The notes beneath the pieces were generated by a model. That model was not told the DNA's origin. It worked only from the letters and a program-made list of their open reading frames with translations, and made no database searches. A DNA stretch of 64,000 bases, taken from IMG/VR virus record IMGVR_UViG_3300046787_000408, positions 1 to 64,000 of that record; one strand, given 5' to 3'. The translations under genes and the position numbers were made by a program. Shown here piece after piece: positions 3-41,060 of this stretch. Within the stretch, counting starts at the first letter, position 1. Every line of letters starts with the position of its first letter.

Positions 3-3000
3 TGCAAACGGGTAAGCACTAGAATTCCACCACGATGCTTCAACAGGGCCACCATCGCCTGCGACCCATGACTTTTGGAAACTGGTGTCGTCATAACCGC
101 CCACTACGCTAACAAATGGACTTACCAAGTTACCTTCACTGTCTACTGGCAGTACAGTGGTCAACTCTGGACGAGCATATGCTGGTAATATATACGCACC
201 GTCGGGGTCAGCAACACGACCTGCTTCAAGGTCGTCCCATAGCACCAAGTTGTCGCTAGTATAAGGTCCTGGACCATACACAGTGTTCCACCAGGTGGGT
301 TTGATTGCAAAGCCCAGCATCTCCCATGGAGTCAACGCAGGGTTTTCTGTGTCGTAGAAGTATCGGTTAATGCCGCGCCAAGCACCCAACAAGTTGGTGT
401 TGTTGAGACGGTCAAAGCTTAGTTTGTTCTGACTACTGCTGTAGTTCCAAGAAAACTCATTACTTGGCAAATAGTTTTGCGAAGTGTAATCCAGTTTGTT
501 CCAGCCTACATAACTTAGGAAATCTGTACTCAACAAACTGTTGATGTCTGAATATGAATATCCTGTTTCACGGAAGTTGCCAGGCAACACATCTGTAATT
601 AACAACGGTACAGGATTTCCGTCCAGTTTCAAGTTGTTGTAGATGCGAGTTTCAAATTCCAGTAGCACCTGATCTCTTATGTCGTCAAACGCAGGAGTTT
701 GGCTACCATCGTGACCCACAATTACAACTGCGGTGCCTGTGGTAGTTTTGGTTTCTACAATTTCTGGACGGTATGCAGGATACAGACCTAGTTTGGTAGG
801 AGTGTTAGGCACAAAGTTGCCGTAGGTAACAGTGTATTCTTGAATGGTAACAACATCGCCCACGGCCAACGGTGTTAGTATGGTCACACGAGGACCGTCT
901 ACAGCCACAGTGTAATCAAAACCACGAGTCAACAACTGACTGTTTTTGTATACCAACAGGCCAAGATAGTTGGCAGAAGTATAGTTATAGATCTGCACAG
1001 TGTCAAACACATTGGTAGTGATTAGACCCACTGTGTAGGAGTTCTCAATGAACACCGATCCAGTTGGCAGCATGTCGCTCCAGTAAAACGGATTGATCTC
1101 AATTCTACCAGCTGTGAGGTTTTCCATGGCCTGTGTTAGAATTTGGCCAGGGGTTTCAAATCCAATGGTGAGTCTAGTAACTTCTTCCAGCATCAAATTC
1201 TTGAACTTTTGATATTCTCTAGAATTGTATTGCAGGCTGGCAAAAATGTTGTACTCTTGCGAGCGGTTAAAATAACCGGGCAATACCAGCGGTGCGCTTT
1301 GTTGCAAAATTACTTGACCATATGGGCCAATGTTGCCAAGATCTCGTGTGTTGTTGGCACCGTTGATTGGACCAGTTAATGTGGTCAAGTTCTCGCAAAT
1401 TGACTCATAGTGAGTACGAACAGTACCCAAGGTAAAGCTGTCACTGTTGCCGTTGATTGGGTTCTTTTCTAGGTTGATAGGAATCTGGTAAAACGCTACC
1501 TGACTAATTTGATCACTCAGTACCAACACTTCTACAATATCACCAATTGCATATGTGTTGTCCAATGCAATAGTGGTTGAGTTATCAAACACTTCAACTG
1601 TGTATGTTCCTGGATCTCGAAATGCTGATCCCACATACACTTGTACCGCAGGTATATTCACATTTGATGATTGTGCCTGCACGTCTAGTTTTAGTAGCTC
1701 GCCAGAGTAGGTAAATTTAAATTGTTGTCTTATTAATGTATCTGTGGCCGCAGTGTTCCATCCAATTTGTCGTTGGAATACTGCTCTGGAGTCATACTCT
1801 CTAACAAAGCCAATGCTGATGGACTCTGTAGTACTAACGTTGTCACGCACATACAAGAAGGTGTCTTTGTAGAGATTGTTCTCAAAAACAATGTCGCCCA
1901 CGTTGTTGAGGTTGAGATACTGCAACGGGAATTGCAACACAGGATCTAGTACACCAGTGTCACCTACAGCATAGCTGAACAATTTGCTGCCTGCAAATGT
2001 TGTACTTGGATATTTTGCAAGATTAGCAAAACTCACTCCATCAGCATCGTAGATGTTGAACAACGGTGCTTGTTGAACACCAGTTTTGAGTTGTGCTTCA
2101 GCCCATACAACACCGTCATACCAAAAAGATATTCCTTTGAGTGTGGTACCGTCAAGACAAACTGTGCTTTGATCAACTAGGACTTCACCGTCAGTGGCCA
2201 ATGTCAAATGAATCAAAGGTTGTTCCACATACGGAGCAATAGAATCTGGTGTAATAAAGTTTACTACCCAGATCTTGTTTCGTACGTTGACGTCAAGGTC
2301 AGCTGCAAAAATAACTCGAGAACCTTCAGTAAAGGTGTAGCCCCCGGTTGAATATCCAGTAGAGCCTTCAATGTTACTGAATGCATCTGTTTCTGTAAAG
2401 TCAATGATGTTAACTGGTTGCTTGCCTTCAGTTCCCATGTTGAACATACGCAGGCCAGGACGGAACTCAATGATTGGTCGTTTGGCGCGGTACGCATTGT
2501 CAATCACTGCTTCTGTATTGTTGTAAACTGCTGTGGCGTTGATAACATCAATGTGGAACCAGCGGTTGCTACGGCTCCAGGCATTAAGGTCCAAGGCAGC
2601 ACGATCAATGGTCAAGTAATCTAGTTCACCAGGTTCAGTAGCTTCAGTGCTACCATCCCCGTCAACTACGTAGGTTTCAGGAGTGATGTAGTTGGTAACT
2701 GGCAACAACTCTATAGCAGTGCCTACTCCACTTATGTAATATTCTTTGTTGATGTATTCAGCTGGCTCTACTTGGCCACGAAACACTACCTTGAGTCCGT
2801 TGGTAAACACTACTCCGTTAGGGCTTGTGTATGCTGGCTTGCCCAGCAGCTCGTCAATAAACAAAGTGTCACTTTGTGTTTGTTCAATCAGTCGAATACG
2901 ACCAAATATTTCTGGATCTGTACCGTCTTGGTAATACAGCGTATCTTGCGCTGCTGTCAACAAAGGTATTTCTCTAAAGAAACCTGCGTCATTTTTGTAC

Positions 3001-4490
3001 CATTGTGTGCTAGCATAGGTATTGCCATAACGCACAGTGAATTTTTCAAGATTGTTGATCAACTGAATGCTGTTCAGCGTCATGTACACATAGCCATCGT
3101 CGTTGACGTATTCAATTTGCCAAATACCAGAGCGTTGATCTAGCGGTACTTCGGTGGTTTCAGAATACAACAAGCTGTCATAACTGCCTGGTTGTCCGTT
3201 GAGAGAGTTGTCTCGATCCAAGGGATCATATACAGTTGTCTTGAACCAGCCGCCTAGGTCAGCGTCTAATGCAGGCTGAGTAAACACTATGGTACGGCCA
3301 TTGAGTTCAGTAATACCGTCAATACCACCGTAGGCTGCAATAAAATCAGCCACTGACACATTGTCCAACTGATCAAACTTGAGCTCAGTAAGCAGATCTA
3401 CTGTGCCAATACTAGGCAAACCGTAGTAAAAATCTTGTGCTGTCTTGGTTGGCACGTTGAATGTAATTGTGCCAAGGTCTTCACCGTTGTTGGTGACGCC
3501 ATATACATCTCTGCTGCTGATGTTGGGAGTGATTGGAACTTTACCGTTTACACCTGGGGCAGACTGAATCCAAAAGCCTGGGCCAGTACCAGCAGTGGCG
3601 TTGGCCACTGCGATGGTGCCTTGCATGTTGCTTTGTGTAGAACTAGCATAGAACAAAGTATCAGGAGCGTCTTGTGGTACTACAAATGTTACCTGTCCAA
3701 CAACTGCTCCGTTGTTGGTTACACCTGAGTTGTAAACGTTGCTCAAGCCTGTGGTTGGAGCTGTTTTGATATAGAATGGGTATGCACCATCTAGGTTCAT
3801 GGTAAACACGTAGGTATTACCGCGAACCAGCGTCAGCGTAGGATTGCTTTGTGAATCAATTACATAGCTACTGATGCCAGAATTGCTTACTCTGTAGTTG
3901 ACAGTTTCTTTGTTGTTTTGTGCAACTTCAAAAGTATAACTACCACCACGCACCAGGTCAATAGTGGGATTAGTTCCAGCCAGACCTGAGAATGAGTACA
4001 CGCCGTTTGCACGATCTACAACAAAGTCATCAGTGGCTGGAACTCCAGTTGCTGCTACATCTACTGATGCAGGGCCGCCGGGAATCCAAAAGTACTGACT
4101 AAAGTTGATGAAGGTATCCCAGTTGATAAAAGGATCCCAGGTGTAGTATTGACTCTCAAACAGTCGATCAGGACGGCTAGCATTGCCTCCCTGATAGGCT
4201 ATTGCATCCAGGATGCCTGGATATGTCATTACGTCGCGAACCTTGTTTGTATCAGGTTCCAGACTTACAACTCCAGCTTCTAACTGATAGTCAGCACGAG
4301 TTTTGTTGGGTTCTACCACATAACGGTCATTGGGGTTTACGCCGGGCCCTACACTGCGACCAATAAAGCCCTGAGTCTTTTTGAACTTGGGCTCCTGAAT
4401 CAGTTGATCCAACGTTGCAGCCAAAAACTGCTTGTTTACATCAGTCTGAAAGATTTCAGGTAAAAATTCTACACTACGTACTCTTGCCAT
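3..4490 (-). CDS. Very large baseplate/virion structural protein (gp7-like wedge position), 3' end beyond the left edge, >1496 aa
   Basis: Absent from the ORF track, consistent with no stop inside the window. ATG at 4490 overlaps the upstream TAA (TAATG) and reads MARVRSVEFLPEIFQTDVNKQFLAATLDQLIQEPKFKKTQGFIGR; the same frame reads ...EASWWNSSAYPFA at the edge. Follows the gp6-like gene. Confidence 0.8.
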   Translation of the reverse strand, partial: MARVRSVEFLPEIFQTDVNKQFLAATLDQLIQEPKFKKTQGFIGRSVGPGVNPNDRYVVEPNKTRADYQLEAGVVSLEPDTNKVRDVMTYPGILDAIAYQGGNASRPDRLFESQYYTWDPFINWDTFINFSQYFWIPGGPASVDVAATGVPATDDFVVDRANGVYSFSGLAGTNPTIDLVRGGSYTFEVAQNNKETVNYRVSNSGISSYVIDSQSNPTLTLVRGNTYVFTMNLDGAYPFYIKTAPTTGLSNVYNSGVTNNGAVVGQVTFVVPQDAPDTLFYASSTQSNMQGTIAVANATAGTGPGFWIQSAPGVNGKVPITPNISSRDVYGVTNNGEDLGTITFNVPTKTAQDFYYGLPSIGTVDLLTELKFDQLDNVSVADFIAAYGGIDGITELNGRTIVFTQPALDADLGGWFKTTVYDPLDRDNSLNGQPGSYDSLLYSETTEVPLDQRSGIWQIEYVNDDGYVYMTLNSIQLINNLEKFTVRYGNTYASTQWYKNDAGFFREIPLLTAAQDTLYYQDGTDPEIFGRIRLIEQTQSDTLFIDELLGKPAYTSPNGVVFTNGLKVVFRGQVEPAEYINKEYYISGVGTAIELLPVTNYITPETYVVDGDGSTEATEPGELDYLTIDRAALDLNAWSRSNRWFHIDVINATAVYNNTEAVIDNAYRAKRPIIEFRPGLRMFNMGTEGKQPVNIIDFTETDAFSNIEGSTGYSTGGYTFTEGSRVIFAADLDVNVRNKIWVVNFITPDSIAPYVEQPLIHLTLATDGEVLVDQSTVCLDGTTLKGISFWYDGVVWAEAQLKTGVQQAPLFNIYDADGVSFANLAKYPSTTFAGSKLFSYAVGDTGVLDPVLQFPLQYLNLNNVGDIVFENNLYKDTFLYVRDNVSTTESISIGFVREYDSRAVFQRQIGWNTAATDTLIRQQFKFTYSGELLKLDVQAQSSNVNIPAVQVYVGSAFRDPGTYTVEVFDNSTTIALDNTYAIGDIVEVLVLSDQISQVAFYQIPINLEKNPINGNSDSFTLGTVRTHYESICENLTTLTGPINGANNTRDLGNIGPYGQVILQQSAPLVLPGYFNRSQEYNIFASLQYNSREYQKFKNLMLEEVTRLTIGFETPGQILTQAMENLTAGRIEINPFYWSDMLPTGSVFIENSYTVGLITTNVFDTVQIYNYTSANYLGLLVYKNSQLLTRGFDYTVAVDGPRVTILTPLAVGDVVTIQEYTVTYGNFVPNTPTKLGLYPAYRPEIVETKTTTGTAVVIVGHDGSQTPAFDDIRDQVLLEFETRIYNNLKLDGNPVPLLITDVLPGNFRETGYSYSDINSLLSTDFLSYVGWNKLDYTSQNYLPSNEFSWNYSSSQNKLSFDRLNNTNLLGAWRGINRYFYDTENPALTPWEMLGFAIKPTWWNTVYGPGPYTSDNLVLWDDLEAGRVADPDGAYILPAYARPELTTVLPVDSEGNLVSPFVSVVGGYDDTSFQKSWVAGDGGPVEASWWNSSAYPFA

Positions 4491-7400
4491 TAAATTACTC
4501 CGCTACCAGGGGCTGTTCGGAGATTGGTGCTGGTCAAAGCCTCAATCACATCTATATTAGTTATGTCTGCTGCATTCACGAATATTTCGTTGGGAGTTGA
4601 ACGAATCTCGTACAAGTCGCCAAAACTCTTTTGTGGGTCCAGTGGTACTAGTACTACCGAACTGATAATGGTTCCCAACTGGCGGTGCAGGTACGCTGCC
4701 AATTCTGAGAAGTAAAAGGTGTCACCAAAGTTCCACTTGTCAATACTGAAGTAGGTGTTCATTTCTGCAATCACAGAGCTTTTGATTTCACTGGTACTGG
4801 CAGTAGACCCTTGAGCACGAATCACCTTGATGGTAGCTCGCAACTGTGGTGCTGCTTTGGCTCCAAACAAGGGCTTGAAGTTTACAGAATTCAACACCAC
4901 GTTGTCAGAGATCATTTTGTAATCCTGCAAGCCTTGGTATGCTGTGCTCAGTTCATCAATAGTAGGAACGCTAGGCTCAGTCACTGTGCCAGTAGTATCA
5001 CGAATCCAGTTTTGATATGCAGTATAGTAGGCTTGTGTGACCACATACAAATCAATAATGTTTGTAGTACCTGGATCAATACGAGTGGTCAGTGGTGAGT
5101 TGTGGCGATACTGAAAGTATAAATCTTGACGTCCAGTGCGTGCAATCCAGCCTGATTGTTCTACCAGCGTGCGAACACCAGCAACGTTGATGCTCAACAA
5201 GTAGAATGCGTCATCAGTGTATGCATAGAAAATTTGTCCAGGGCTCCATTCGCTCTTGACCAATTCAATGTCATCCAGAGTAGCGTAGTCACTGTTTACA
5301 ATACCTTCTTCAACCAAGAGATATCTTTGCAAGTTGTCAAAGTCCACAGTTTGTTGCAAGAACACCAGTTTCTGGTTGGAATTTACACCAGGGGCAACAA
5401 TTTCTTTAAAGAAGTCTGGGTTGTCTGGTACACCGTCGTTGTCGCTGTCACGGAAGCTGACCAAGACTTGGAAGTCGTCAACATAACCGTCTGACTCAAC
5501 TGGCTGACCAATAATGTCCATGACCACATCGCCTTCTAAAGGAGCTGAGTCGTCAGGTTGAGTATTCATGGCCAACACATTGATAAAGTCTTTGATAATC
5601 GTGCCAGTTCTGCTGTCATAGATCAACTGATCGCCGTAGAAGAAAAAGCGAGTCTGCAACACACTACCAAAGTAGTAGGCTAGGCCACGGAATGTCACAG
5701 TGTAGTTTTGATTTTCCACTACAAATTGTATCAGCCAACTTGCGTCACTGTTTGTGCCTGCTGTTGACCCTGCATTGGCATCGCTCCAGGCAGCATCTTG
5801 ATCCAAATTGGTACTGGTAATAATATACCAAGTGCCTGTTAGGTTGTTGTAGCCTAGACCAAAGTCACGGAACAACTCAATTTGGTCGCCCATTTGTTGT
5901 TCTAGCGACACTGGCAGGTCAGTTACAAATAGCGGAATAATTTCGCTGACCACTGCGCCTGTGGGCACAAAGTTGTTGACTGTGACTGGGCCTGCGCCTG
6001 AACTTAAATTGCCTAGGCCATTGTTGTATCCATCGCCTACAATGGCTTGTGGACTAGCCCAAATTTCTGTGCGTTCGTCAGGTCGGGTAGGTACGCCAGC
6101 TTGCAGTCGATTGTTACGATCAAAGTAATAAGGCTGTCCGTTAATAACTGGAGCCACAAACTTGATCAAGCTGCCAACTTGCACATACTTAAAATCAGTA
6201 CCGCTGCTGGGACCAACAGGAACAGCAGTGCCTGCAGAATTCTTGAAATAACCAGTAGTTTCGTTGGCCAAGGTAGTGGACTGTTGCCATGTACTTCCAG
6301 CAATGCTAACAAATGCAGTACCGGTTCCTGCTCCTACTCCTGTGGCCACAAATTCTGTGCCCACGGTGTTGTTTGCCGCACCAATAGCAGTAAAGTTGGT
6401 AGTGCCCACAGTGGCAATTACATACGGTTGCCCAATTACAAAGCTGCCTGCTGGTGCTGCATTGGTGTACACACGAGGGAAATTGTCGTAGTAGAACTGC
6501 TTCATTGTGGCTTCAGTCAATTGCGGTTGTACTGAGTTGGTCACAAAGTCTGCGATTTCGTTACGGTTGGTCCACCCAAACAAGATAGTGGGCAGTATGT
6601 TGTTTTCCCACAATGCGCCGTCGCTAGAGAAACTGTTGGTACTAGAATACTTGCCAGTGTTGTCCACTAGATCCAAATAACGGCTGGTACCAATCGATGC
6701 ACGGTTAAGCGCCTTGCTCTTGATAATACTGTTGTACTGAGTAAACGGAAACAAGTTGTAGTCTTCGCCGTTGACCATACGGTTTTGTGTATAGTATCTA
6801 GCAGGAGCACGTTGTTTGATTGCATCAATAGGTTCACGAGCCTGTGCATTAGTCACTGGTTGTGTAATACCACAAGTGAATGTAATTGTTTCAAGATTAC
6901 CGCTACGGCTGGTATAACTGATAGGGATACTCACGCTCTGCATTTCAGCAGGATTGATAATGTATTCCAAACCGTTTGAAGCACGAGTGTAGCATCGGAA
7001 AATACCCACTGGGATTTCGCTAAACACACCGTCACCAAATACCAAGGTAATTTGGTCATTGGTTCTACTGGTTGTGCTGTAGATTGGACGAAGTTCTACT
7101 TGTTGTTCTGCTGCGGCAGTGTAAACACTTTCCACATACTGCCACTCACGAGTGATGTTACCAACGTTGTCCAACTGGAATAGCCAACGATCTTCATTGT
7201 TAACACCTTCCACGTTGATGTTTACAGTGCGGTTGCTAATACGTTCACTCAAGTTGAAGTCCGTGTTGATCAAAGTTCCTTGTTTGAACGCAAAGAAATA
7301 GCCAGTGTTGGCGCTTTGAAAGCCCAGTTGATCATTGCGGAACAAGATGTTAAAGGGCGAATTTGCTGTTGGAGCAGGTTCGTACACATAGTCACGACCC

Positions 7401-8059
7401 ACGCTGGTTGATGTTACTGCTTCAAACGGCATTGATACACCGTCAATTGTGGCAGTATACGGCACCACTGGCAAAAAGCCTGGCAACAGATTGATAGCAT
7501 ATTCTTCTGTGCGTACACCTAGAATTGTTTGGCGATTACCAGGACGTCCCACACGCTGACTGTCTACTAGAGCTGCATTGATAATTGTGGTAAACTGTTC
7601 TTGCCAATCAGGGTTTGTGGGGTCAGCCCAGTCCACAGTAACATTGCTTAGGTTAATACCGTTGTAGTCCGTGACGTTTTCTGTAGTGGTTACGTTGAAT
7701 ACTTTGAGAAAGCCACTAGATGCAGTATTTCGTTTGGGATCGTAGCTGACCAAGTTGGCCAAGCGTACCACACTGTCACGACGTTCAGCAGTGTCTAAAT
7801 AGTTTTCACGAGTGTTAAGGTCAGTACGGAACGCAAGACTTTGTCCCATGAATGCAATAATATCCAACAGTGCAATAAATTCTGAACTTTCAATATAGTC
7901 GTTGAAAGTTTCTGGATAGTACAATCTCAAATAATCTACAAAACTCTTGCGCAGAGTTTCAAAGTCGTAGCTTTGGAAGTCAGCTTCCCTGTAGGTCTGA
8001 TATATTTGTTTCCAGTCTTCTACACCGAAAATTGCTGTTTGTCTAGTGGTTTTTGCCAT
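4490..8059 (-). CDS. Baseplate wedge protein, T4 gp6-like (1189 aa)
   Basis: N-terminal YDFETLRKSFVDYL...LDIIAFMG...ENYLDTAERRDSVVRLANLVSYDPKR and EPIDAIKQRAPARYYTQNRMVNGEDY match gp6/gpJ motifs; next to a gp25-like gene. Confidence 0.85.
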   Translation of the reverse strand: MAKTTRQTAIFGVEDWKQIYQTYREADFQSYDFETLRKSFVDYLRLYYPETFNDYIESSEFIALLDIIAFMGQSLAFRTDLNTRENYLDTAERRDSVVRLANLVSYDPKRNTASSGFLKVFNVTTTENVTDYNGINLSNVTVDWADPTNPDWQEQFTTIINAALVDSQRVGRPGNRQTILGVRTEEYAINLLPGFLPVVPYTATIDGVSMPFEAVTSTSVGRDYVYEPAPTANSPFNILFRNDQLGFQSANTGYFFAFKQGTLINTDFNLSERISNRTVNINVEGVNNEDRWLFQLDNVGNITREWQYVESVYTAAAEQQVELRPIYSTTSRTNDQITLVFGDGVFSEIPVGIFRCYTRASNGLEYIINPAEMQSVSIPISYTSRSGNLETITFTCGITQPVTNAQAREPIDAIKQRAPARYYTQNRMVNGEDYNLFPFTQYNSIIKSKALNRASIGTSRYLDLVDNTGKYSSTNSFSSDGALWENNILPTILFGWTNRNEIADFVTNSVQPQLTEATMKQFYYDNFPRVYTNAAPAGSFVIGQPYVIATVGTTNFTAIGAANNTVGTEFVATGVGAGTGTAFVSIAGSTWQQSTTLANETTGYFKNSAGTAVPVGPSSGTDFKYVQVGSLIKFVAPVINGQPYYFDRNNRLQAGVPTRPDERTEIWASPQAIVGDGYNNGLGNLSSGAGPVTVNNFVPTGAVVSEIIPLFVTDLPVSLEQQMGDQIELFRDFGLGYNNLTGTWYIITSTNLDQDAAWSDANAGSTAGTNSDASWLIQFVVENQNYTVTFRGLAYYFGSVLQTRFFFYGDQLIYDSRTGTIIKDFINVLAMNTQPDDSAPLEGDVVMDIIGQPVESDGYVDDFQVLVSFRDSDNDGVPDNPDFFKEIVAPGVNSNQKLVFLQQTVDFDNLQRYLLVEEGIVNSDYATLDDIELVKSEWSPGQIFYAYTDDAFYLLSINVAGVRTLVEQSGWIARTGRQDLYFQYRHNSPLTTRIDPGTTNIIDLYVVTQAYYTAYQNWIRDTTGTVTEPSVPTIDELSTAYQGLQDYKMISDNVVLNSVNFKPLFGAKAAPQLRATIKVIRAQGSTASTSEIKSSVIAEMNTYFSIDKWNFGDTFYFSELAAYLHRQLGTIISSVVLVPLDPQKSFGDLYEIRSTPNEIFVNAADITNIDVIEALTSTNLRTAPGSGVI

Positions 8060-22694: not shown

Positions 22695-22939
22695 AAAAAC
22701 ATCAACACTTGTATAACAGCAACGAAAGCTACAAATCACATTTGGTATGGGCAATAACTTCAGGTGTCCAGCTGATATGGGCTGGCATCATGAGTCTGCT
22801 TCATGCAATTTATCCTGGCTGGTTCCCGTTTGGCGCTGCAAAAACAGTCATTGACTTATATTACAAAAGACTGCATAATCATGTTAATGACGATTATCAA
22901 CGCTATATCCAACAAGTTAAAAATCAAAAGAAATCATGA
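22691..22939 (+). CDS. Small hydrophobic protein (resembles DUF6356 as recalled)
   Basis: HL...NESYKSHL..A...G......LLHAIYP pattern; ATGA-coupled on both sides. Confidence 0.6.
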   Translation: MKKHQHLYNSNESYKSHLVWAITSGVQLIWAGIMSLLHAIYPGWFPFGAAKTVIDLYYKRLHNHVNDDYQRYIQQVKNQKKS

Positions 22940-25017
22940 TCCAAATTAAAAAACTCACTGTCAAGAACTTTATGAGCGTGGGCAATGCCACGCAAGGTAT
23001 TGACTTTGATCGCAGAGACTTAACACTGGTACTAGGGGAAAATTTAGATCTTGGTGGCGACGGTAGTCGCAACGGCACCGGCAAAACCACTATCATCAAT
23101 GCTCTCAGCTATGCTTTGTATGGTAATGCCCTGTCAAACATTCGCAAAGACAATCTTGTGAACAAAACCAACGGCAAGAACATGTTGGTAAGTCTGGATT
23201 TCAGCGTAGGCGGACAGGACTACAGAATTGAACGTGGACGCAAACCCAACGTTCTAAAGTTCTATGTGAATCACGAAGCACAAGCTGCTACAGACGAAGC
23301 ACAAGGCGAAAACAAAGAAACACAAGAAGCCATTGAACGTGTGATGGGCATGAGTCACGACATGTTCAAACATGTGTTGGCTCTAAATACCTATACCGAA
23401 CCGTTCCTGAGTTTGAAAGCCAACGACCAACGTGCTATCATTGAACAGTTGTTGGGTATCACACTGTTGAGCGAACGTGCTGATCGTATCAAAGAACTCA
23501 ACCGGCAAACCAAAGATGCTATCTCGCAAGAAGAATTTAGAATACGAGCTGAACAAGAAGCAAACAAACGTATCGAAGAACAGATCGAAAGTTTGCGTCG
23601 TCGCCAAGTGATGTGGCAGAAAAAATACGACAGTGATCTACAGAGCCTGGTTGTGCAATACGATGACTTGTCAAAGATCAACATCGAAGTAGAATTACAA
23701 GCACACCGAGACCTAGCAGTTTGGAGTGATCAAAAGAAACAACAGGAAACCTACAACTCGTTGGTGGCCCGTAGTACCGCTTGGAAACAAAAGCAACAAG
23801 CTGAATGGCAAGCTGCTGGCAGTGCGTACTTGGACAAAAATCGCATCAACATTGATATTGAACTTGAAGCCTGGGCACAGTTGTCTGCTTACAATCAAAA
23901 GTCCAAAGACATTGCTGAATTACAAAAGCTAATTGAACGCTGTGTTCAAGACGAGAAGAAAGAAACCAAGCTAGTAGAAAAACTACGAGCCGAAATCCAA
24001 GAACTCAAGAATCACAAATGTTATGCTTGTGGTCAAGACTTTCATGACGCCAATCACGAAAGTGTGTTGGTCTCCAAGGAAAAAGCCCTTCAAGAAGCTG
24101 CACTACAGGCCCTGGCCACTAACACTCAATGGGTCGAACATACTGATGCTTTGCTAAAGCTAGGGGAGTTGGGCACAAAGCCAGTTACTCATTACAAAAC
24201 TGAAGCAGAAGCAATTCGCCATGCTGGCGAGTTAGCCAGCTTGAAACAGGCCATGGATGCTAAAGAAGCGGAAGTCAACCCGTTTGCTGAACAGTTGGCC
24301 GAGCTGGAAGAAGTTGTGCCTGGACCACAACCAGTCACACACTACGACACCGAAGCTGAAGCTATCAAACATTCTAGTCAAGTGGCCAGTTTGTTAGCAC
24401 AGATTACCAACAAGCATGCTGAAACTGATCCTTACACTGAACAGATTGATGAAATGACTGGGCAAGCTTTGCAACCGGTCAGTTACAGTCATCTTAATGA
24501 ACTTACACGAGTTCAAGACCATCAAGACTTTTTGCTCAAACTGCTGACTTCTAAAGACTCATTTGTTCGCAAAAAGATTATTGATCAAAACTTGAGCTAT
24601 CTCAACAGCCGACTCACACATTACTTGGATCGCATGGGCCTCCCGCACACAGTTAAATTCATGAATGACTTGTCAGTCAACATTGAAGAACTGGGTCGAG
24701 AACTGGACTTTGACAATCTTTCAAGAGGTGAACGTACCAGATTGATTCTCAGCATGAGCTGGGCGTTTCGTGATGTGTGGGAAAGTTTGTATTACCCCAT
24801 TAACTTGATGTTTATTGATGAACTGATCGACAACGGACTAGACACAGCCGGAGTGGAGAATGCACTGGGCTTGTTGAAACGCATGAGTCGCGAACGCAAC
24901 AAGAGCGTGTGGCTTGTGAGTCACCGAGACGAACTAGCCGGACGAGTTGAAAACATACTCAAGGTAGTCAAAGAGAACGGCTTCACAAATTACAATACAG
25001 ACGTAGATGTTGCTTGA
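22936..25017 (+). CDS. gp46: Recombination ATPase subunit (gp46/SbcC/Rad50)
   Basis: KNFMSVG, Walker A NGTGKTT, zinc hook CYAC, signature LSRGE, Walker B FIDE, VSH. Confidence 0.95.
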   Translation: MIQIKKLTVKNFMSVGNATQGIDFDRRDLTLVLGENLDLGGDGSRNGTGKTTIINALSYALYGNALSNIRKDNLVNKTNGKNMLVSLDFSVGGQDYRIERGRKPNVLKFYVNHEAQAATDEAQGENKETQEAIERVMGMSHDMFKHVLALNTYTEPFLSLKANDQRAIIEQLLGITLLSERADRIKELNRQTKDAISQEEFRIRAEQEANKRIEEQIESLRRRQVMWQKKYDSDLQSLVVQYDDLSKINIEVELQAHRDLAVWSDQKKQQETYNSLVARSTAWKQKQQAEWQAAGSAYLDKNRINIDIELEAWAQLSAYNQKSKDIAELQKLIERCVQDEKKETKLVEKLRAEIQELKNHKCYACGQDFHDANHESVLVSKEKALQEAALQALATNTQWVEHTDALLKLGELGTKPVTHYKTEAEAIRHAGELASLKQAMDAKEAEVNPFAEQLAELEEVVPGPQPVTHYDTEAEAIKHSSQVASLLAQITNKHAETDPYTEQIDEMTGQALQPVSYSHLNELTRVQDHQDFLLKLLTSKDSFVRKKIIDQNLSYLNSRLTHYLDRMGLPHTVKFMNDLSVNIEELGRELDFDNLSRGERTRLILSMSWAFRDVWESLYYPINLMFIDELIDNGLDTAGVENALGLLKRMSRERNKSVWLVSHRDELAGRVENILKVVKENGFTNYNTDVDVA

Positions 25018-25126
25018 TACAAACATCTACGTTTTGACAAATCACTGGCAGCAAAAATACCACTAAAATAACAGGCAACACTTTGATCATGCTAACTAAT
25101 ACATAAGGCAGCAACGCAAAACAAAC

Positions 25127-25555
25127 ATGACTTGGTTATATCAAAACACCCCAGTTGAGACATTACCCGAAGAGTGTATTGGATTTGTATACTTAATCAC
25201 CAATAATCTATCTGGACGCAAGTACATAGGCAAAAAACTAGCAAAATTTAGCAAGACCACTTACAAAACAGTCAAGCAAAAAAACGGCATCAAAAAGAAA
25301 AAGAAGGTTAGATCAAAAGTCGATTCAGACTGGCGCGACTACTATGGTAGCAGCGAGCATCTAACCGCAGACATCGCACAATTAGGCACCGAAAACTTTA
25401 CCAGAGAAATACTTTACTATTGCACATCAAAAGCGCAGTGTTCGTACATTGAAGCTCGCGAGCAGTTTGATCGTAAAGTATTAGAATCAACAGATTATTA
25501 CAACGGCCATATCTCGGTTAGAGTACATGGCTCACATATCATAAACAAAATTTAA
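25127..25555 (+). CDS. Single-domain GIY-YIG endonuclease (EndoII/Seg-like catalytic domain only)
   Basis: GFVYLITN...YIGKK, YYGSS, FTREIL, E, YYN; Lys-rich insertion; no C-terminal DNA-binding repeats. Confidence 0.85.
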   Translation: MTWLYQNTPVETLPEECIGFVYLITNNLSGRKYIGKKLAKFSKTTYKTVKQKNGIKKKKKVRSKVDSDWRDYYGSSEHLTADIAQLGTENFTREILYYCTSKAQCSYIEAREQFDRKVLESTDYYNGHISVRVHGSHIINKI

Positions 25556-25559
25556 GTCA

Positions 25560-25995
25560 GGCAGTTTCGGCCCGCACAAGCCAATATCGTGTGCCCTAGA
25601 CCTGGATCACGGATCACAGGGATGGAAGTCTTGCCGCGCCAGCAAGCACTCAATCAGTATCCTTGACAGGACCACGATCGCTAATTGCTGCGGTTTGATT
25701 GTTTGAAGATGAATAAAAGCTAAAAAGACGCTACCGTGGGGTAGCAGGTTGGCACAGTATGTTAGCGTATGTTGTGTCAATTGCCGTTGTGATAAAGACA
25801 ACACTCGAGGTACCGGACAACCGCCTCTGTAATGTGTTAACGCTAAGTGACTTGCCCGACTCGGATGAAGTTTCTTTGCCCTGTGCGGGCAAAGTGTGAC
25901 CATAAGATCTGGATGAATACTTAGTCGCTTCGCTCTTGAGCTAACAGTATGTGTGAGCGATAGCGAAACACTGATGTGCGTAGCACATCAAAACA
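25560..25995 (+). ncRNA. Candidate large structured non-coding RNA (strand inferred)
   Basis: About 440 bp gap in a gene-dense genome containing at least nine stem-loops, e.g. GCTACC/GGTAGC 25730-25745, CTTTGCCC/GGGCAAAG 25874-25894, TGATGTGC/GCACATCA 25972-25990. Confidence 0.55.
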
Positions 25996-25998
25996 CAG

Positions 25999-26373
25999 TT
26001 AATATATTTTCTCTTCTACTATATCACTGTTTGTGATTTGATTGATTTGGCGTTTGATTGCAGCTCTTTGATCGTTCTTGATATACACAGCCCTTGCCAA
26101 AGCAATGAAATCACTGTCAAATTGTTGACGTTGTTCGTGTTGCCTTTTGGCATCTTCAATATTCCACAGTTCTTGGTTTATTGCGTGTAGCTGTATGGTT
26201 TGTTGTGAGATGTCTTGGCTCAATGCCAACTGATTGAGAGTGCTGTTGAGCTGGGTTAACTCAACAGAAACATTGTGTGTTTGTGTGGGTGTGCGGGCAT
26301 GAGCCAATTTTATCTGCAAGATTGTTATCTTGTCAATCAACTCGCCTACACTAACCGGGACATGCACTATCAT
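25999..26373 (-). CDS. Conserved small helical protein (resembles DUF6165 as recalled)
   Basis: VPVSVGELIDKITILQIK...INQELWNIED...FIALARAVYIKNDQRAAIKRQIN...SDIVEEK. Confidence 0.7.
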   Translation of the reverse strand: MIVHVPVSVGELIDKITILQIKLAHARTPTQTHNVSVELTQLNSTLNQLALSQDISQQTIQLHAINQELWNIEDAKRQHEQRQQFDSDFIALARAVYIKNDQRAAIKRQINQITNSDIVEEKIY

Positions 26374-39071: not shown

Positions 39072-40220
39072 TTAGACCTTGAACCACGAGAGATATTGGG
39101 AAACACGATCAGTCACACTGTTCCAGTCTCCCATGGCAGGTTGTCTAAACAATCTAGCAGTAGCATACCAAGGTGAATCATCTCGATTCAACAACCAACG
39201 CCAGTCAGTGCTGAACCAATTGAGCATGATCCAGACTGGTCTTCCTAAACTACCGGCCAAATGCGCTACTGCGGTATCTACACTAATAATCACATCCATG
39301 TGCATCATTTGTGCAGCAGTGTCGGCCCATTGATATTGACTAGGCGGCAAACAGTGTACTCCTGCTGCTTTTAATTCATCTTCTTCTTCAGCGGTACAAT
39401 CAGCCTGCAAGTTGATCCACTCGTGCTGAGGATTTTTACGTATCAACTCTAACATTTGTTCAAAGGGCATACCTTTGTGACGATTTAACCAGTTATCTCT
39501 ACGTCCACTCCAGCTAAACCCCACACGCATACGATGCTTGGGCCCAAAGTAGTCTAGCCATCTACGTTGCAGTCCTGCATCAGCATTAAGATAATTTACT
39601 GGACGAGGCATGTTGTCCAATGTGACTCCTAGTATACCCGGGATGCTCATGATCGGAGTCCAGTAATCAAAGTCGTTCACAGTGTAGTCATAACCGCTGA
39701 CTCTTTTAATAATTGGGCTGGCACTAAGCATAGGAACCAAACCATCTGTAACTTGCAAAATAATTTCAGCGCCCATCACATGCAGATTGTATACAAAACG
39801 CACAAACTGAATGTTGTCTCCGTGTCCTTGTTCGCCTACCACAAGAATAGTTTTGCCCTGAAGATCCTCACCGCGCCATCTTGGCTGTGTAAATGGTGGC
39901 ATTGTATTGGCTAGATGTTCATAGTCCCATCGAGTTTCGTATGCTGGCCATCCTTGGGCATAGTCTCCAGACAACAAATGAGCCACTGCAAGATTGAATT
40001 TTGCAGTTACATTGGAGGGTTCCAATTGAATAGCCCTTTGCAAAAACGGTATAGCTGCTTGGGGTTCTCCAACTTCTCGTAGCACATTACCGTAGTTGTT
40101 GAATGCAGCCGACGAATTGCGATCCTGTGCAAATGCCAAGGCGTAGCATTGCAAAGCCTGTTCGGGCTGATCATCGGACCGGTGTTGATTGCCTTGATCT
40201 ATAAGTTGATTTGTGTTCAC
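39072..40220 (-). CDS. TPR-repeat glycosyltransferase (GT-B, GT9-like C-terminus)
   Basis: TPRs (AFNNYGNVLREVG...), EQGHGDNIQFVRF, DVIISVDTAVAHLAGSLGRPVW, DWRW. Probable start is GTG 40220, 4 nt after TAAATA (40230-40225). Confidence 0.85.
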   Translation of the reverse strand: MNTNQLIDQGNQHRSDDQPEQALQCYALAFAQDRNSSAAFNNYGNVLREVGEPQAAIPFLQRAIQLEPSNVTAKFNLAVAHLLSGDYAQGWPAYETRWDYEHLANTMPPFTQPRWRGEDLQGKTILVVGEQGHGDNIQFVRFVYNLHVMGAEIILQVTDGLVPMLSASPIIKRVSGYDYTVNDFDYWTPIMSIPGILGVTLDNMPRPVNYLNADAGLQRRWLDYFGPKHRMRVGFSWSGRRDNWLNRHKGMPFEQMLELIRKNPQHEWINLQADCTAEEEDELKAAGVHCLPPSQYQWADTAAQMMHMDVIISVDTAVAHLAGSLGRPVWIMLNWFSTDWRWLLNRDDSPWYATARLFRQPAMGDWNSVTDRVSQYLSWFKV

Positions 40221-40260
40221 TGAATATTTAATGCTGCGGTAGTTGTAGTGTAGATTTTCA

Positions 40261-40358
40261 TAAATACTTGTCAACACAATCAGGTGTTTTATGCTGGGAC
40301 TAACTACCCACAGCGTAGCGGCTAGAACCCGCATCGGACTTCTTTAAGGAGAAAACAA
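40261..40358 (+). promoter_or_regulatory. Late promoter and ~90 nt structured 5' leader
   Basis: TAAATA 40261-40266; stems AACAC/GTGTT, TGGG/CCCA, GCGG/CCGC; TAAGGAG RBS. Confidence 0.55.
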
Positions 40359-41060
40359 ATGGGTCGTCCTCTAAAAATTAAAAAATCTACCACTAGCGAT
40401 ATTGGTTTCAATCCGTTCAGCGCACTAACAAACCCAGTATATCCATCAACTCCTACTGTGTTTGATGGTACTGAGTATTTGGGTGTTGTTGGTGGTGCCA
40501 ATGCCAACGTAGCATCTACTGCATTTCCAGTAGTCAAGTGCCGTGCGTTTATCGCAGGTACAAGCGCAGAAGATGATGCATACATCATCACACAAAAAGG
40601 CACAACCAAGTATCAAGTGGCTACAGTAAGTGCTATCAATGACGAAGACATTGTGGCCGGACGTGCATACAGAATCTTGGCAGTGGGAACTACCAACTGG
40701 GCAGCCATTGGAGCCAGCGGTTCCGCTGCGGTAGGCGATGTGTTTACAGCCACAGGTGCTGGTGCAGGTACAGGTACTGTGCAAGCAGTGGGCACATGTA
40801 TTCTAGCCAACCAAGCTGATACTGCATTGACTTCGGGCAACATGAACATCACATTCAGCACTGGCGACAGTACTGCTCAATTGATCAGCAAGCTGACCAA
40901 CAAGTTTGCTTTGGATTACAGCACACCGCCAGTTCGTTATTTGACCAACTTCTTCAGTGACGAAGGTTACGAAATCAAGTCAGGTACCACTGGTGCCGCC
41001 AACGTAACCGGACAACAAAACCAAGTTAGCTTGGCAATTGTAGAGAACTTTACTTCGTAA
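40359..41060 (+). CDS. Putative virion structural protein
   Basis: 233 aa, Thr/Gly/Ala-rich, own late promoter, strong RBS and terminator. Confidence 0.65.
   Translation: MGRPLKIKKSTTSDIGFNPFSALTNPVYPSTPTVFDGTEYLGVVGGANANVASTAFPVVKCRAFIAGTSAEDDAYIITQKGTTKYQVATVSAINDEDIVAGRAYRILAVGTTNWAAIGASGSAAVGDVFTATGAGAGTGTVQAVGTCILANQADTALTSGNMNITFSTGDSTAQLISKLTNKFALDYSTPPVRYLTNFFSDEGYEIKSGTTGAANVTGQQNQVSLAIVENFTS

What the first reader, a model, noticed from the sequence alone, without database searches (positions are those of the whole stretch)
25127..25995. Minimal GIY-YIG nuclease followed directly by a ~440 nt hairpin-dense non-coding element: candidate nuclease-RNA system
Seen: this is the largest non-coding gap in the window, starting right after the nuclease stop. 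Stems: GCACA/TGTGC (25574-25594); CCTGGATC/GATCACAGG (25601-25620); CTTGC/GCAAG (25630-25646); CAATCA/TGATTG (25651-25701) enclosing TCCT/AGGA; GCTACC/GGTAGC (25730-25745); TTGGCACA/TGTGTCAA (25749-25780); AACAC/GTGTT enclosing GAGG..CGG-acaa-CCG.CCTC (25800-25838); CTTTGCCC/GGGCAAAG (25874-25894) flanked by two GGATGAA copies; TCGCTTCGCTC/GAGCGATAGCGA (25925-25966); TGATGTGC/GCACATCA (25972-25990). G-U pairs favour the plus strand. I do not recognise tRNA, tmRNA, RNase P, group I/II intron or CRISPR signatures. The nuclease has only the catalytic domain plus a Lys-rich insert (KTVKQKNGIKKKKKVRSK) and lacks the DNA-binding repeats of the other two endonucleases here. Inference (speculative): an undescribed large phage ncRNA, possibly co-transcribed with and bound by the nuclease as a guide, scaffold or inhibitor. 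Alternatives are an independent ncRNA or a replication origin.
Basis: partly seen in the sequence, partly recalled or inferred. Interest (0 to 1): 0.82.

Follow-up and report, generated by a model that had tools for sequence, protein, structure and literature searches.

The report
Nuclease-linked large structured phage RNA
The 440-base gap after a tiny GIY-YIG nuclease gene in this freshwater jumbo-phage fragment encodes one large, doubly pseudoknotted RNA; its first third is the already catalogued Polynucleobacter-1 motif, and it almost never occurs without a small nuclease gene just upstream, so the two form a mobile nuclease-plus-RNA cassette of unknown mechanism.

Summary
Window 25556-25998 is the largest non-coding gap, lying between convergent genes. 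It is not wholly new: 25569-25704 (+) is a full-length Polynucleobacter-1 RNA (Rfam RF01718, 112.5 bits). Weinberg et al. 2010 had already noted that this motif lies downstream of one gene family.

What is new:
- Comparison with more than 300 related viral contigs shows the whole gap (25569-25990, + strand) is one covarying RNA. Its parts are an exchangeable 5' domain, a core with two pseudoknots, and a 3' module.
- In the 3' module, two 7-nt boxes flank a hairpin. They are identical to each other in 175 of 180 loci, across nine versions.
- Linkage to the nuclease is near-obligate in both directions. It was 126/126 with a probe that uses neither the nuclease nor the core.
- The cassette sits in many genomic contexts and can carry an extra ORF. 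In two loci it carries a PD-(D/E)XK nuclease instead of GIY-YIG, with the RNA intact.
- No guide-like segment tracks context.

I read it as an obligate, co-transcribed RNA module of a mobile nuclease cassette that works regardless of nuclease family. A programmable-guide role is unlikely. Function is unresolved and transcription is unproven.

The parts
25091..25101 (+). Left-end motif of the cassette (gCTAACTAATA; relatives have ggcATAACTATA or CTAACTAA 0-35 nt before the ATG). Probably the cassette promoter or left border.
   Evidence: Similarity between loci from different contexts begins here. The motif is kept in the PDDEXK cassette L407. There are only 3 such motifs in the 64 kb window. 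Promoter function is inferred.
25127..25555 (+). Minimal GIY-YIG nuclease, 142 aa, catalytic domain only, with a Lys-rich beta-hairpin (residues 40-66).
   Evidence: Pfam PF19835 SegE_GIY-YIG, E 3.8e-33, covering 3-129. phrog_447. The GIY/YIG tyrosines Y22 and Y33, plus R93, E109/E112 and N126, are at least 98% conserved in 142 distinct relatives. AF2 pLDDT 79; best PDB fold match I-TevI catalytic domain 1LN0.
25569..25990 (+). The whole structured RNA (about 420 nt), made of the parts listed below.
   Evidence: Homologous and covarying over its whole length in type-A relatives.
25569..25704 (+). 5' domain = Polynucleobacter-1 RNA (Rfam RF01718). It is exchangeable: other cassettes carry unrelated 5' domains (types B and C).
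   Evidence: cmscan 112.5 bits against a gathering score of 37, model positions 1-141/141. Types B and C give no Rfam hit. Clustering.
25730..25745 (+). Hairpin Ha, preceded by a conserved A-run (25722-25728). Read on the minus strand it looks like an intrinsic terminator.
   Evidence: Covaries in A1. Minus-strand terminator-like hit at 25746..25729.
25749..25780 (+). Hairpin Hb. Its loop UUAGCGU (25762-68) forms pseudoknot PK2 with 25840-25846.
   Evidence: In PK2 all 7 pairs show compensatory changes and 85.7-89% of cells are paired.
25786..25790 (+). 5' strand of pseudoknot PK1 (GUUGU), pairing with ACAAC 25817-25821 in the loop of hairpin Hc.
   Evidence: 100% of cells paired in 48 sequences, with UA/CG and GC/AU/GU exchanges. 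Compensatory GUCAG/CUGAC in L407.
25800..25838 (+). Helix Px (25800-04/25834-38) enclosing hairpin Hc (25807-11/25823-27). Holds the near-invariant GGUACCGGACAACCGCC.
25840..25846 (+). 3' strand of pseudoknot PK2 (ACGCUAA).
25845..25871 (+). Unit U1 (AAGUGAC-N8-CUC-GGAUGAA-G). Twin box 1 = 25863-25869.
25874..25894 (+). Hairpin Hd between the two units.
   Evidence: 89% canonical; 5 of 8 pairs compensatory.
25892..25919 (+). Unit U2 (AAGUGUGAC-N7-UCU-GGAUGAA-UA). Twin box 2 = 25911-25917.
   Evidence: The box is identical to box 1 in 175/180 loci, in nine versions.
25926..25934 (+). Small hairpin He (degenerate in the window; 4 bp with a UUC loop in relatives).
25951..25971 (+). Hairpin Hf: outer helix, GA/GAA internal loop, and a 2-bp stem whose tetraloop is GNRA in most relatives (GAUA in the window).
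25972..25990 (+). Terminal hairpin Hg. It marks the right end of the cassette and is probably the transcript end; relatives follow it with UCUUUAAU.
   Evidence: 93% canonical; 8/8 pairs compensatory. Similarity between contexts stops just after it.

Best explanation
The gap encodes a modular plus-strand RNA of about 420 nt. It forms the 3' half of a mobile cassette that looks like a free-standing homing-endonuclease cassette.

The cassette has this layout:
- a short left-end motif;
- a small nuclease gene without a DNA-binding domain (almost always this GIY-YIG, rarely a PD-(D/E)XK enzyme);
- sometimes one extra ORF;
- an exchangeable 5' RNA domain (here the Polynucleobacter-1 motif);
- a core with two pseudoknots;
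- a constant 3' module (unit 1, hairpin, unit 2, three hairpins) that ends the cassette.

Shown: the RNA structure, its strand, its modules, its near-obligate coupling to a nuclease gene, the scatter of the cassette over many genomic contexts, and the nuclease swap.

Inferred:
- The RNA is made as the 3' part of the nuclease transcript, because there is no promoter motif and only 13 nt between the stop codon and the RNA, and it ends at the terminal hairpin.
- It is needed for the cassette to persist.
- It acts in a way that does not depend on the fold of the nuclease. I commit to a role as controller of the cassette's nuclease, setting dose or timing or acting as a decoy or antidote. The twin 7-nt boxes would be two equivalent sites for one still unidentified partner. 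I do not think it is a programmable guide.
For: - Rfam hit for the 5' domain.
- Homology of the whole gap downstream of GIY-YIG genes.
- Covariation including two pseudoknots.
- Linkage, probe 1: 93 of 101 RNA cores have the GIY-YIG gene upstream (88 of them with the gene ending 157-330 nt before the core motif, nearly all 247-330).
- Linkage, probe 2: 119 of 124 Polynucleobacter-1 hits have it.
- Linkage, probe 3: 126 of 126 twin-box modules found without reference to nuclease or core have it.
- Reverse linkage: 71 of 74 genes of this GIY-YIG subfamily are followed by the module, sometimes after an extra ORF.
- Many upstream and downstream contexts. The cassette is present directly after Rad50 in only 14 of 70 related loci.
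- The nuclease is replaced by PDDEXK_15 in L137 and L407. L407 keeps the left motif and an intact RNA with compensated PK1; L137's contig ends just after the core.
- Nuclease active-site residues are conserved.
- Twin boxes are identical in 175/180 loci.
Against: - Transcription is not shown. Metatranscriptome contigs contain relatives of both the ORF and the RNA, but DNA carry-over cannot be excluded and contigs have no direction.
- No partner for the twin boxes was found in cis, in the nuclease sequence or in the flanks.
- A controller sited 3' of its gene is unusual, and 420 nt with two pseudoknots is far more than a terminator or stabiliser needs.
- The two PDDEXK loci share one context, so the swap is a single event.
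- No cultured phage carries the RNA, so nothing has been tested experimentally.
Confidence: 0.4

Rival explanations
1. Ribonucleoprotein nuclease. The RNA binds the nuclease, which lacks a DNA-binding domain, and supplies DNA recognition or assembles two monomers on the twin boxes. The cassette would then be an RNA-dependent homing nuclease, analogous to IscB/TnpB with their omega RNAs.
For: - The nuclease is a bare catalytic domain with a Lys-rich beta-hairpin arm.
- Coupling is near-obligate and co-directional at a fixed distance.
- Two equivalent boxes could seat a dimer.
- Exchangeable 5' domains could be alternative specificity modules.
Against: - No segment varies with the insertion context.
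- Box versions do not covary with nuclease residues.
- The identical RNA serves an unrelated PD-(D/E)XK nuclease.
- 36-50% identical nucleases in 499 cultured-phage records have no such RNA.
- No RuvC- or HNH-type RNA-binding architecture is present.
Confidence: 0.17
2. Purely cis-acting cassette end. The RNA region would be only a bidirectional terminator, insulator and 3' stabiliser that lets the cassette sit between convergent genes without disturbing them.
For: - It is always the 3' end of the cassette, even when an extra ORF intervenes.
- The terminal hairpin is followed by a U-rich run in relatives.
- Ha plus its A-run reads as a minus-strand terminator.
- This role is indifferent to the nuclease family.
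Against: - Two conserved pseudoknots, near-invariant single-stranded stretches, GNRA loops and twin boxes under identity selection are not needed for termination.
- The 5' domains are large and separately conserved.
Confidence: 0.17
3. Autonomous phage ncRNA gene. Either it is a conserved landing site for homing endonucleases, or it is useful cargo that the nuclease merely helps to spread.
For: - Two unrelated nuclease families sit next to the same RNA.
- Homing endonucleases commonly target conserved RNA or protein genes (general knowledge).
- One locus has an RNA with a decayed GIY-YIG remnant (L115).
Against: - RNA without a nuclease is very rare: 0 of 126 with the unbiased probe and at most 8 of 101 with the core probe, several of which are chance or PDDEXK cases.
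- The RNA moves with the nuclease through many contexts instead of holding a fixed position.
Confidence: 0.12
4. Processing ribozyme or substrate. The twin boxes would be two equivalent cleavage sites, cut by the RNA itself, by a host RNase or by the nuclease, releasing the hairpin-containing piece or maturing the 3' end of the mRNA. This would resemble the repeat processing of type III toxin-antitoxin RNAs.
For: - Direct repeats kept identical by selection.
- A compact pseudoknotted core with invariant nucleotides.
Against: - No match to any ribozyme family in Rfam, even at E up to 10.
- No read-level end data.
- There are only two repeats, and they are not full-length identical.
Confidence: 0.09
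5. DNA-level element: a replication origin with iterons, or a recombination site.
For: - Two direct repeats evolve in concert.
- The region is A-rich.
Against: - Compensatory changes with many strand-specific G-U pairs and two pseudoknots indicate selection on a single-stranded plus-strand RNA.
Confidence: 0.03

Closest known systems
Polynucleobacter-1 RNA motif (Rfam RF01718; Weinberg et al. 2010, PMC2864571)
   Same: Window 25569-25704 is a full-length, high-scoring member. As noted in the paper's Additional file 1, it lies downstream of one gene family (GOS11034, similar to cyanophage P-SSM2 PSSM2_218) and comes from fresh water.
   Different: The catalogued motif is 141 nt, was built from 16 examples and has no known function. 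Here it is only one of at least three exchangeable 5' domains of a 420-nt RNA. The upstream gene is identified as a minimal GIY-YIG nuclease in a mobile cassette.
HEARO / IscB and TnpB omega RNAs (OMEGA systems)
   Same: A large structured RNA is encoded next to a small nuclease gene inside a mobile element. The RNA lies at the element's end.
   Different: Those nucleases are RuvC (+HNH) enzymes with RNA-binding lobes, carried by IS200/605 transposons, and the RNA has a guide that matches the flank. Here there is a GIY-YIG or PD-(D/E)XK catalytic domain, no transposase and no context-matched segment.
Free-standing GIY-YIG homing endonucleases of T4-like phages (Seg proteins) and I-TevI
   Same: GIY-YIG catalytic domain of the SegE type. 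Intergenic and patchy presence among related phages. Probably its own promoter.
   Different: Seg proteins and I-TevI carry C-terminal DNA-binding domains and have no associated structured RNA, except for the group I intron that hosts I-TevI. Here there is no DNA-binding domain, no intron signature and no split host gene.
Type III toxin-antitoxin systems (ToxIN)
   Same: A protein nuclease encoded beside a structured RNA with direct repeats kept alike. An RNA antidote is one possible mechanism.
   Different: ToxI repeats lie upstream of the toxin, are tandem 36-nt units, and ToxN is an endoribonuclease. Here there are two partial repeats downstream of a DNA-nuclease-type gene.
Large ornate phage- or lake-derived ncRNAs (GOLLD, ROOL)
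   Same: Large, elaborately folded RNAs of unknown function, found in phages and environmental DNA.
   Different: No sequence or model similarity. Those are not tied to a nuclease gene.

Membership tests
Polynucleobacter-1 RNA (RF01718) | Score at or above the curated gathering score over the full covariance model | tested here: met
   112.5 bits against 37; model positions 1-141/141; E 1.4e-23
Polynucleobacter-1 RNA (RF01718) | Position downstream of the GOS11034 / PSSM2_218-like gene family | tested here: met
   The RNA lies 13 nt after the GIY-YIG ORF. That ORF has relatives in T4-like cyanophages. Identity of the ORF with GOS11034 itself is inferred.
GIY-YIG nuclease superfamily (SegE-type domain, PF19835) | Profile match above the curated cutoff | tested here: met
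   114.8 bits against 25, covering residues 3-129
GIY-YIG nuclease superfamily (SegE-type domain, PF19835) | Conserved GIY and YIG tyrosines, and the Arg, Glu and Asn of the active site | tested here: met
   Y22, Y33, R93, E109/E112 and N126 are at least 98% conserved in 142 distinct relatives. Assignment of each residue to a catalytic role is inferred.
GIY-YIG nuclease superfamily (SegE-type domain, PF19835) | GIY-YIG alpha/beta fold | tested here: inconclusive
   The best PDB match is the I-TevI catalytic domain 1LN0 (probability 0.98, TM 0.59 on the target), but E is only 0.1.
Seg-type free-standing homing endonuclease | C-terminal DNA-binding domain | tested here: not met
   The 142-aa protein is filled by the catalytic domain. 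The last 20 residues are modelled as disordered.
Seg-type free-standing homing endonuclease | Patchy intergenic presence among related phages | tested here: met
   14 of 70 Rad50-related loci have the cassette directly after Rad50, while others have it further on or not at all. Several upstream context clusters exist.
Seg-type free-standing homing endonuclease | Site-specific cleavage of the cassette-free allele, and homing | not testable with these tools
   Needs enzyme assays and co-infection experiments.
RNA-guided nuclease systems (IscB/TnpB omega RNA, HEARO) | RuvC or HNH nuclease with an RNA-binding domain | tested here: not met
   Only the GIY-YIG domain is found.
RNA-guided nuclease systems (IscB/TnpB omega RNA, HEARO) | A variable guide segment that matches the flank or target | tested here: not met
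   No RNA position or box version tracks context. The variable linker has no match elsewhere in the window.
Group I intron carrying a GIY-YIG gene | Group I catalytic core and an interrupted host gene | tested here: not met
   No Intron_gpI hit even at E up to 10. The flanking genes are convergent and intact.
Type III toxin-antitoxin | Tandem RNA repeats upstream of an endoribonuclease toxin | tested here: not met
   The RNA is downstream and has two partial repeats, and the nuclease is of the DNA-nuclease type. Inhibition of the nuclease by the RNA was not tested.

The most novel reading that the evidence does not exclude
The cassette is a new kind of RNA-dependent nuclease system. A large folded RNA, rather than a protein domain, decides where or whether a bare, structure-selective nuclease (GIY-YIG or RusA-like PD-(D/E)XK) cuts. 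The twin 7-nt boxes would define a small set of specificity or immunity types among competing phages.
Probability: 0.15. Interest if true: 0.95.

Novelty: new variant of a known kind. Interest (0 to 1): 0.7.

Why it matters
- A 2010 orphan RNA motif turns out to be one interchangeable domain of a much larger RNA.
- The last orphan 'endonuclease-associated RNA' (HEARO) proved to be the guide of IscB. This is a second, unrelated nuclease-RNA pairing, and its nuclease lacks any DNA-binding domain.
- Even if the RNA is only a controller or antidote, this would be the first elaborate RNA partner described for a free-standing homing-type nuclease.
- The twin boxes, held identical through nine versions without a visible partner, are a type of covariation that standard RNA-structure models do not explain.

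Tried and rejected
- tRNA/tmRNA scan: none.
- Rfam at permissive E-values on the window and on type B and C RNAs: only Polynucleobacter-1.
- DNA similarity to 50,697 phage records: none.
- Group I intron reading: rejected, with no model hit and convergent intact neighbours.
- Partner for the twin boxes, all negative or weak:
  - extra copies or complements within 1.5 kb;
  - covariation with any column from the nuclease start to unit 1;
  - covariation within type A or type B 5' domains;
  - wobble-tolerant complement search, which found only a U/G-rich stretch in 31 of 143;
  - coupling to nuclease residues;
  - coupling to genomic context.
- Genome-wide avoidance of the own box: the window has 0 further copies against 5.7 expected, but this does not hold over 172 loci.
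- Empty-site comparison after Rad50: the region is a variable gene island, so no clean empty allele was found.
- Scan of bacterial and archaeal genomes for the core 17-mer: almost all chance hits, with two short MAG contigs real.
- Metatranscriptome contigs: presence only, with no ends or direction.
- Conserved ORF in the gap: rejected because indels are not multiples of three and ORFs are sporadic.
Full report
**What is at the coordinates**

The ORF 25127-25555 (+) encodes a 142-aa protein that is filled almost entirely by the Pfam domain SegE_GIY-YIG (E 3.8e-33, residues 3-129). The next gene, 25999-26373, is on the minus strand (DUF6165). The 443-nt gap therefore lies downstream of two convergent genes. 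It is the largest non-coding stretch in the window. The seemingly empty first 4.5 kb is a 1500-aa open frame on the minus strand that runs off the window. ARAGORN finds no tRNA or tmRNA.

**Part of it is already known**

Rfam places a full-length Polynucleobacter-1 RNA (RF01718) at 25569-25704 on the plus strand. It scores 112.5 bits against a gathering score of 37. The only paper in the library that names this motif is Weinberg et al. 2010. Nothing in Rfam matches 25705-25998, even at E up to 10.

**The whole gap is one structured RNA**

Relatives of the nuclease are very numerous in viral contigs: more than 593, with 80 fetched at 72-94% identity. Nearly all are followed by an ORF-free stretch of 380-500 nt.

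In 21 of them the whole window gap aligns at 67-82% identity. RNAalifold finds 57 pairs, 34 of them with compensatory changes, and many invariant G-U pairs that exist only on the plus strand.

With 136 non-redundant sequences, mutual information and per-helix counts support these elements:

| Element | Window coordinates | Support |
|---|---|---|
| Hairpin Hb | 25749-80 | covaries |
| Helix Px | 25800-04 / 25834-38 | covaries |
| Hairpin Hc | 25807-11 / 25823-27 | covaries |
| Hairpin Hd | 25874-94 | covaries |
| Hairpin He | 25926-34 | covaries |
| Hairpin Hf | 25951-71 | covaries; tetraloop is GNRA in most relatives (GAUA in the window) |
| Terminal hairpin Hg | 25972-90 | 8/8 pairs compensatory |
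| Pseudoknot PK1 | 25786-90 with 25817-21 | covaries |
| Pseudoknot PK2 | loop 25762-68 with 25840-46 | covaries |

The pair-counting tool on a 48-sequence alignment gives 84.6% paired cells against 69.5% in shuffles (0/500). With slid partners the figure is 37-49%. PK1 is 100% paired and PK2 85.7% paired, with all seven pairs changed on both sides.

Single-sequence folding energy is only weakly better than shuffles (z = -1.7 to -3.3). Covariation, not energy, is the evidence. Relatives instead show two local hairpins.

**The RNA is modular**

The first ~340 nt after the nuclease gene fall into at least three types that BLAST cannot connect:
- Type A (the window) starts with Polynucleobacter-1.
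- Type B has another 5' domain but keeps Hc, PK1 and the near-invariant GGUACCGG..ACCGCC.
- Type C shares only the 3' module.

Types B and C have no Rfam match. The common part of all three is unit 1, hairpin, unit 2, and the terminal hairpins Hf and Hg (type B lacks the small hairpin He).

**Twin boxes**

Units U1 (25845-71) and U2 (25892-919) are partial direct repeats. Their 7-mers, NNAURAN, are GGAUGAA in the window at 25863-69 and 25911-17.

- Positions 48 nt apart covary as identities (A with A, G with G), not as complements.
- In 180 loci the two boxes are identical in 175, although nine versions exist. The regex required at least 6 of 7 matches, so the informative contrast is 175 exact against 5 with one mismatch.
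- I found no complementary or third copy in cis.
- There is no link to genomic context, no clear link to nuclease residues and no general avoidance of the box elsewhere in the genomes.
- Within a unit, 25850/25864 change A.G to G-C, which fits a tandem sheared G.A motif.

**Linkage to the nuclease**

I used three independent probes and one reverse test.

| Probe | Loci with enough upstream sequence | With GIY-YIG upstream |
|---|---|---|
| Core 17-mer | 101 | 93 (88 ending 157-330 nt before the core motif, nearly all 247-330; 5 with one extra ORF between) |
| Polynucleobacter-1 pattern | 124 | 119 |
| Twin-box pattern (uses neither nuclease nor core) | 126 | 126 (119 directly, 7 with an ORF between) |

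- For the Polynucleobacter-1 pattern, 101 of 112 loci also have the core downstream.
- In reverse, 71 of 74 genes of this GIY-YIG subfamily are followed by the module.
- The few RNAs without GIY-YIG include two loci (L137, L407) where a PD-(D/E)XK endonuclease gene (PF24608; PHROG 'RusA-like') takes its place. L407 keeps the left-end motif CTAACTAA, a complete type-A RNA, matched boxes and a compensated PK1. L137's contig ends just after the core, and its upstream sequence does not show the motif.
- One locus (L115) has a decayed GIY-YIG remnant.

**The cassette and its mobility**

- Similarity between loci from different places begins at a short motif (ggcATAACTATA or CTAACTAA; window 25091-25101) up to 35 nt before the ATG, and ends just after hairpin Hg.
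- Flanks fall into many clusters.
- Among 70 loci with a closely related Rad50-like gene, only 14 have the cassette directly after it. Others have it one or two genes later or not at all, within a variable gene island.
- Host contigs range from 4 to 347 kb. The window itself comes from a 299,983-bp viral contig.
- This is the behaviour of a free-standing homing-endonuclease cassette, except that the nuclease has no DNA-binding domain and an elaborate RNA always comes along.

**The nuclease**

- Active-site-type residues are at least 98% conserved in 142 distinct relatives.
- An AlphaFold model (pLDDT 79) matches the I-TevI catalytic domain best, though weakly (1LN0, probability 0.98, E 0.1). 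It shows the Lys-rich stretch as a long beta-hairpin (residues 40-66) and a disordered tail.
- There is no sequence hit in the PDB.
- More distant homologues (36-50% identity) occur in 499 cultured-phage records. These are mostly T4-like cyanophages, plus Melnitz, phiN3 and others, often mislabelled 'NAD synthetase'. In the three I inspected there was no large downstream gap.
- The RNA itself has no match in cultured phages.

**Expression**

Contigs from four metatranscriptomes contain relatives of the ORF and of parts of the RNA. One example is a 253-nt contig spanning 25783-25989. Such contigs carry no direction and may derive from DNA. Transcription is therefore unproven. Only 13 nt separate the stop codon from the start of the Rfam match, there is no second copy of the left motif, and the RNA always closes the cassette. 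From this I infer co-transcription with the nuclease gene.

**Interpretation**

Obligate two-way coupling and a conserved nuclease argue that RNA and nuclease need each other. This weakens the 'independent RNA gene' reading.

Four findings argue against a programmable guide and against a tight, fold-specific RNP:
- the nuclease swap;
- the tolerated extra ORF;
- RNA-free homologues of the nuclease in cultured phages;
- the absence of any context-matched segment.

Strand-specific covariation excludes a DNA-only element. The complexity of the fold argues against a mere terminator.

I therefore favour an obligate, co-transcribed RNA module that controls or neutralises whichever small nuclease the cassette carries, with the twin boxes as two equivalent sites for one unknown partner (confidence 0.4). 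The RNP reading (0.17), a pure cassette-end element (0.17), an autonomous RNA (0.12), a processing element (0.09) and a DNA element (0.03) remain as rivals.

**Novelty**

Literature searches for GIY-YIG with ncRNA, RNA-guided, or endonuclease-associated RNA found no description of this pairing.

The finding is partly known: the motif, and a note on its neighbouring gene family. The new parts are:
- the 420-nt architecture with two pseudoknots;
- the exchangeable 5' domains;
- the twin boxes;
- the identification of the neighbour as a minimal GIY-YIG nuclease;
- the mobile cassette and the nuclease swap.

Noticed in passing
window 40272-40361 (+): A second catalogued environmental RNA motif, freshwater-2 (RF02980, 68.2 bits against a gathering score of 49.9). 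It lies directly upstream of ORF 40359-41060 (+) and overlaps the start of the divergent ORF 39072-40334 (-).
   Followed up: partly
window 3-4502 (-) and 4490-8059 (-): Two very large adjacent minus-strand reading frames: an open frame of at least 1500 aa that runs off the window start, and a 1189-aa ORF. They explain why the first 4.5 kb show no listed ORFs.
   Followed up: partly
window 25863-25869 and 25911-25917; 180 related loci: The twin 7-nt boxes are kept identical to each other through nine versions, with no detectable complementary partner. This is identity covariation rather than base-pair covariation.
   Followed up: yes
L407:3963-4484 and L137:8819-9385: The same type-A RNA follows a PD-(D/E)XK endonuclease gene (PF24608, PHROG 'RusA-like resolvase') instead of the GIY-YIG gene.
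   Followed up: yes
L094, L101, L145, L149, L194, L002, L020, L023, L050, L051: Some cassettes carry one extra ORF of 238-337 aa between the nuclease gene and the RNA (in L050/L051 the insert was not characterised). One (L094) has a weak methyltransferase-like Pfam hit; the others have no family match.
   Followed up: partly
window 25722-25746: Hairpin Ha with its conserved upstream A-run reads on the minus strand as an intrinsic terminator (hairpin followed by UCUUUUUAGC). If used, it would stop convergent transcription inside the RNA region, before the nuclease gene.
   Followed up: no
window 22936-25017 and loci L484-L562: The Rad50/SbcC-like gene is followed in related phages by a highly variable set of genes, many with Cys-rich radical-SAM-like N-termini. 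This looks like a plasticity hotspot where the cassette sits at different positions.
   Followed up: partly
cultured-phage records (e.g. KR052482.1 phiN3, GU071101.1 P-HM1): Homologues of this minimal GIY-YIG protein are annotated 'NAD synthetase' in many GenBank phage records and in PHROG 447. This looks like a propagated misannotation.
   Followed up: no
window 1-64000: GGATGAA occurs nowhere else on either strand of the window, against about 5.7 copies expected. The depletion did not generalise to 172 related loci.
   Followed up: yes
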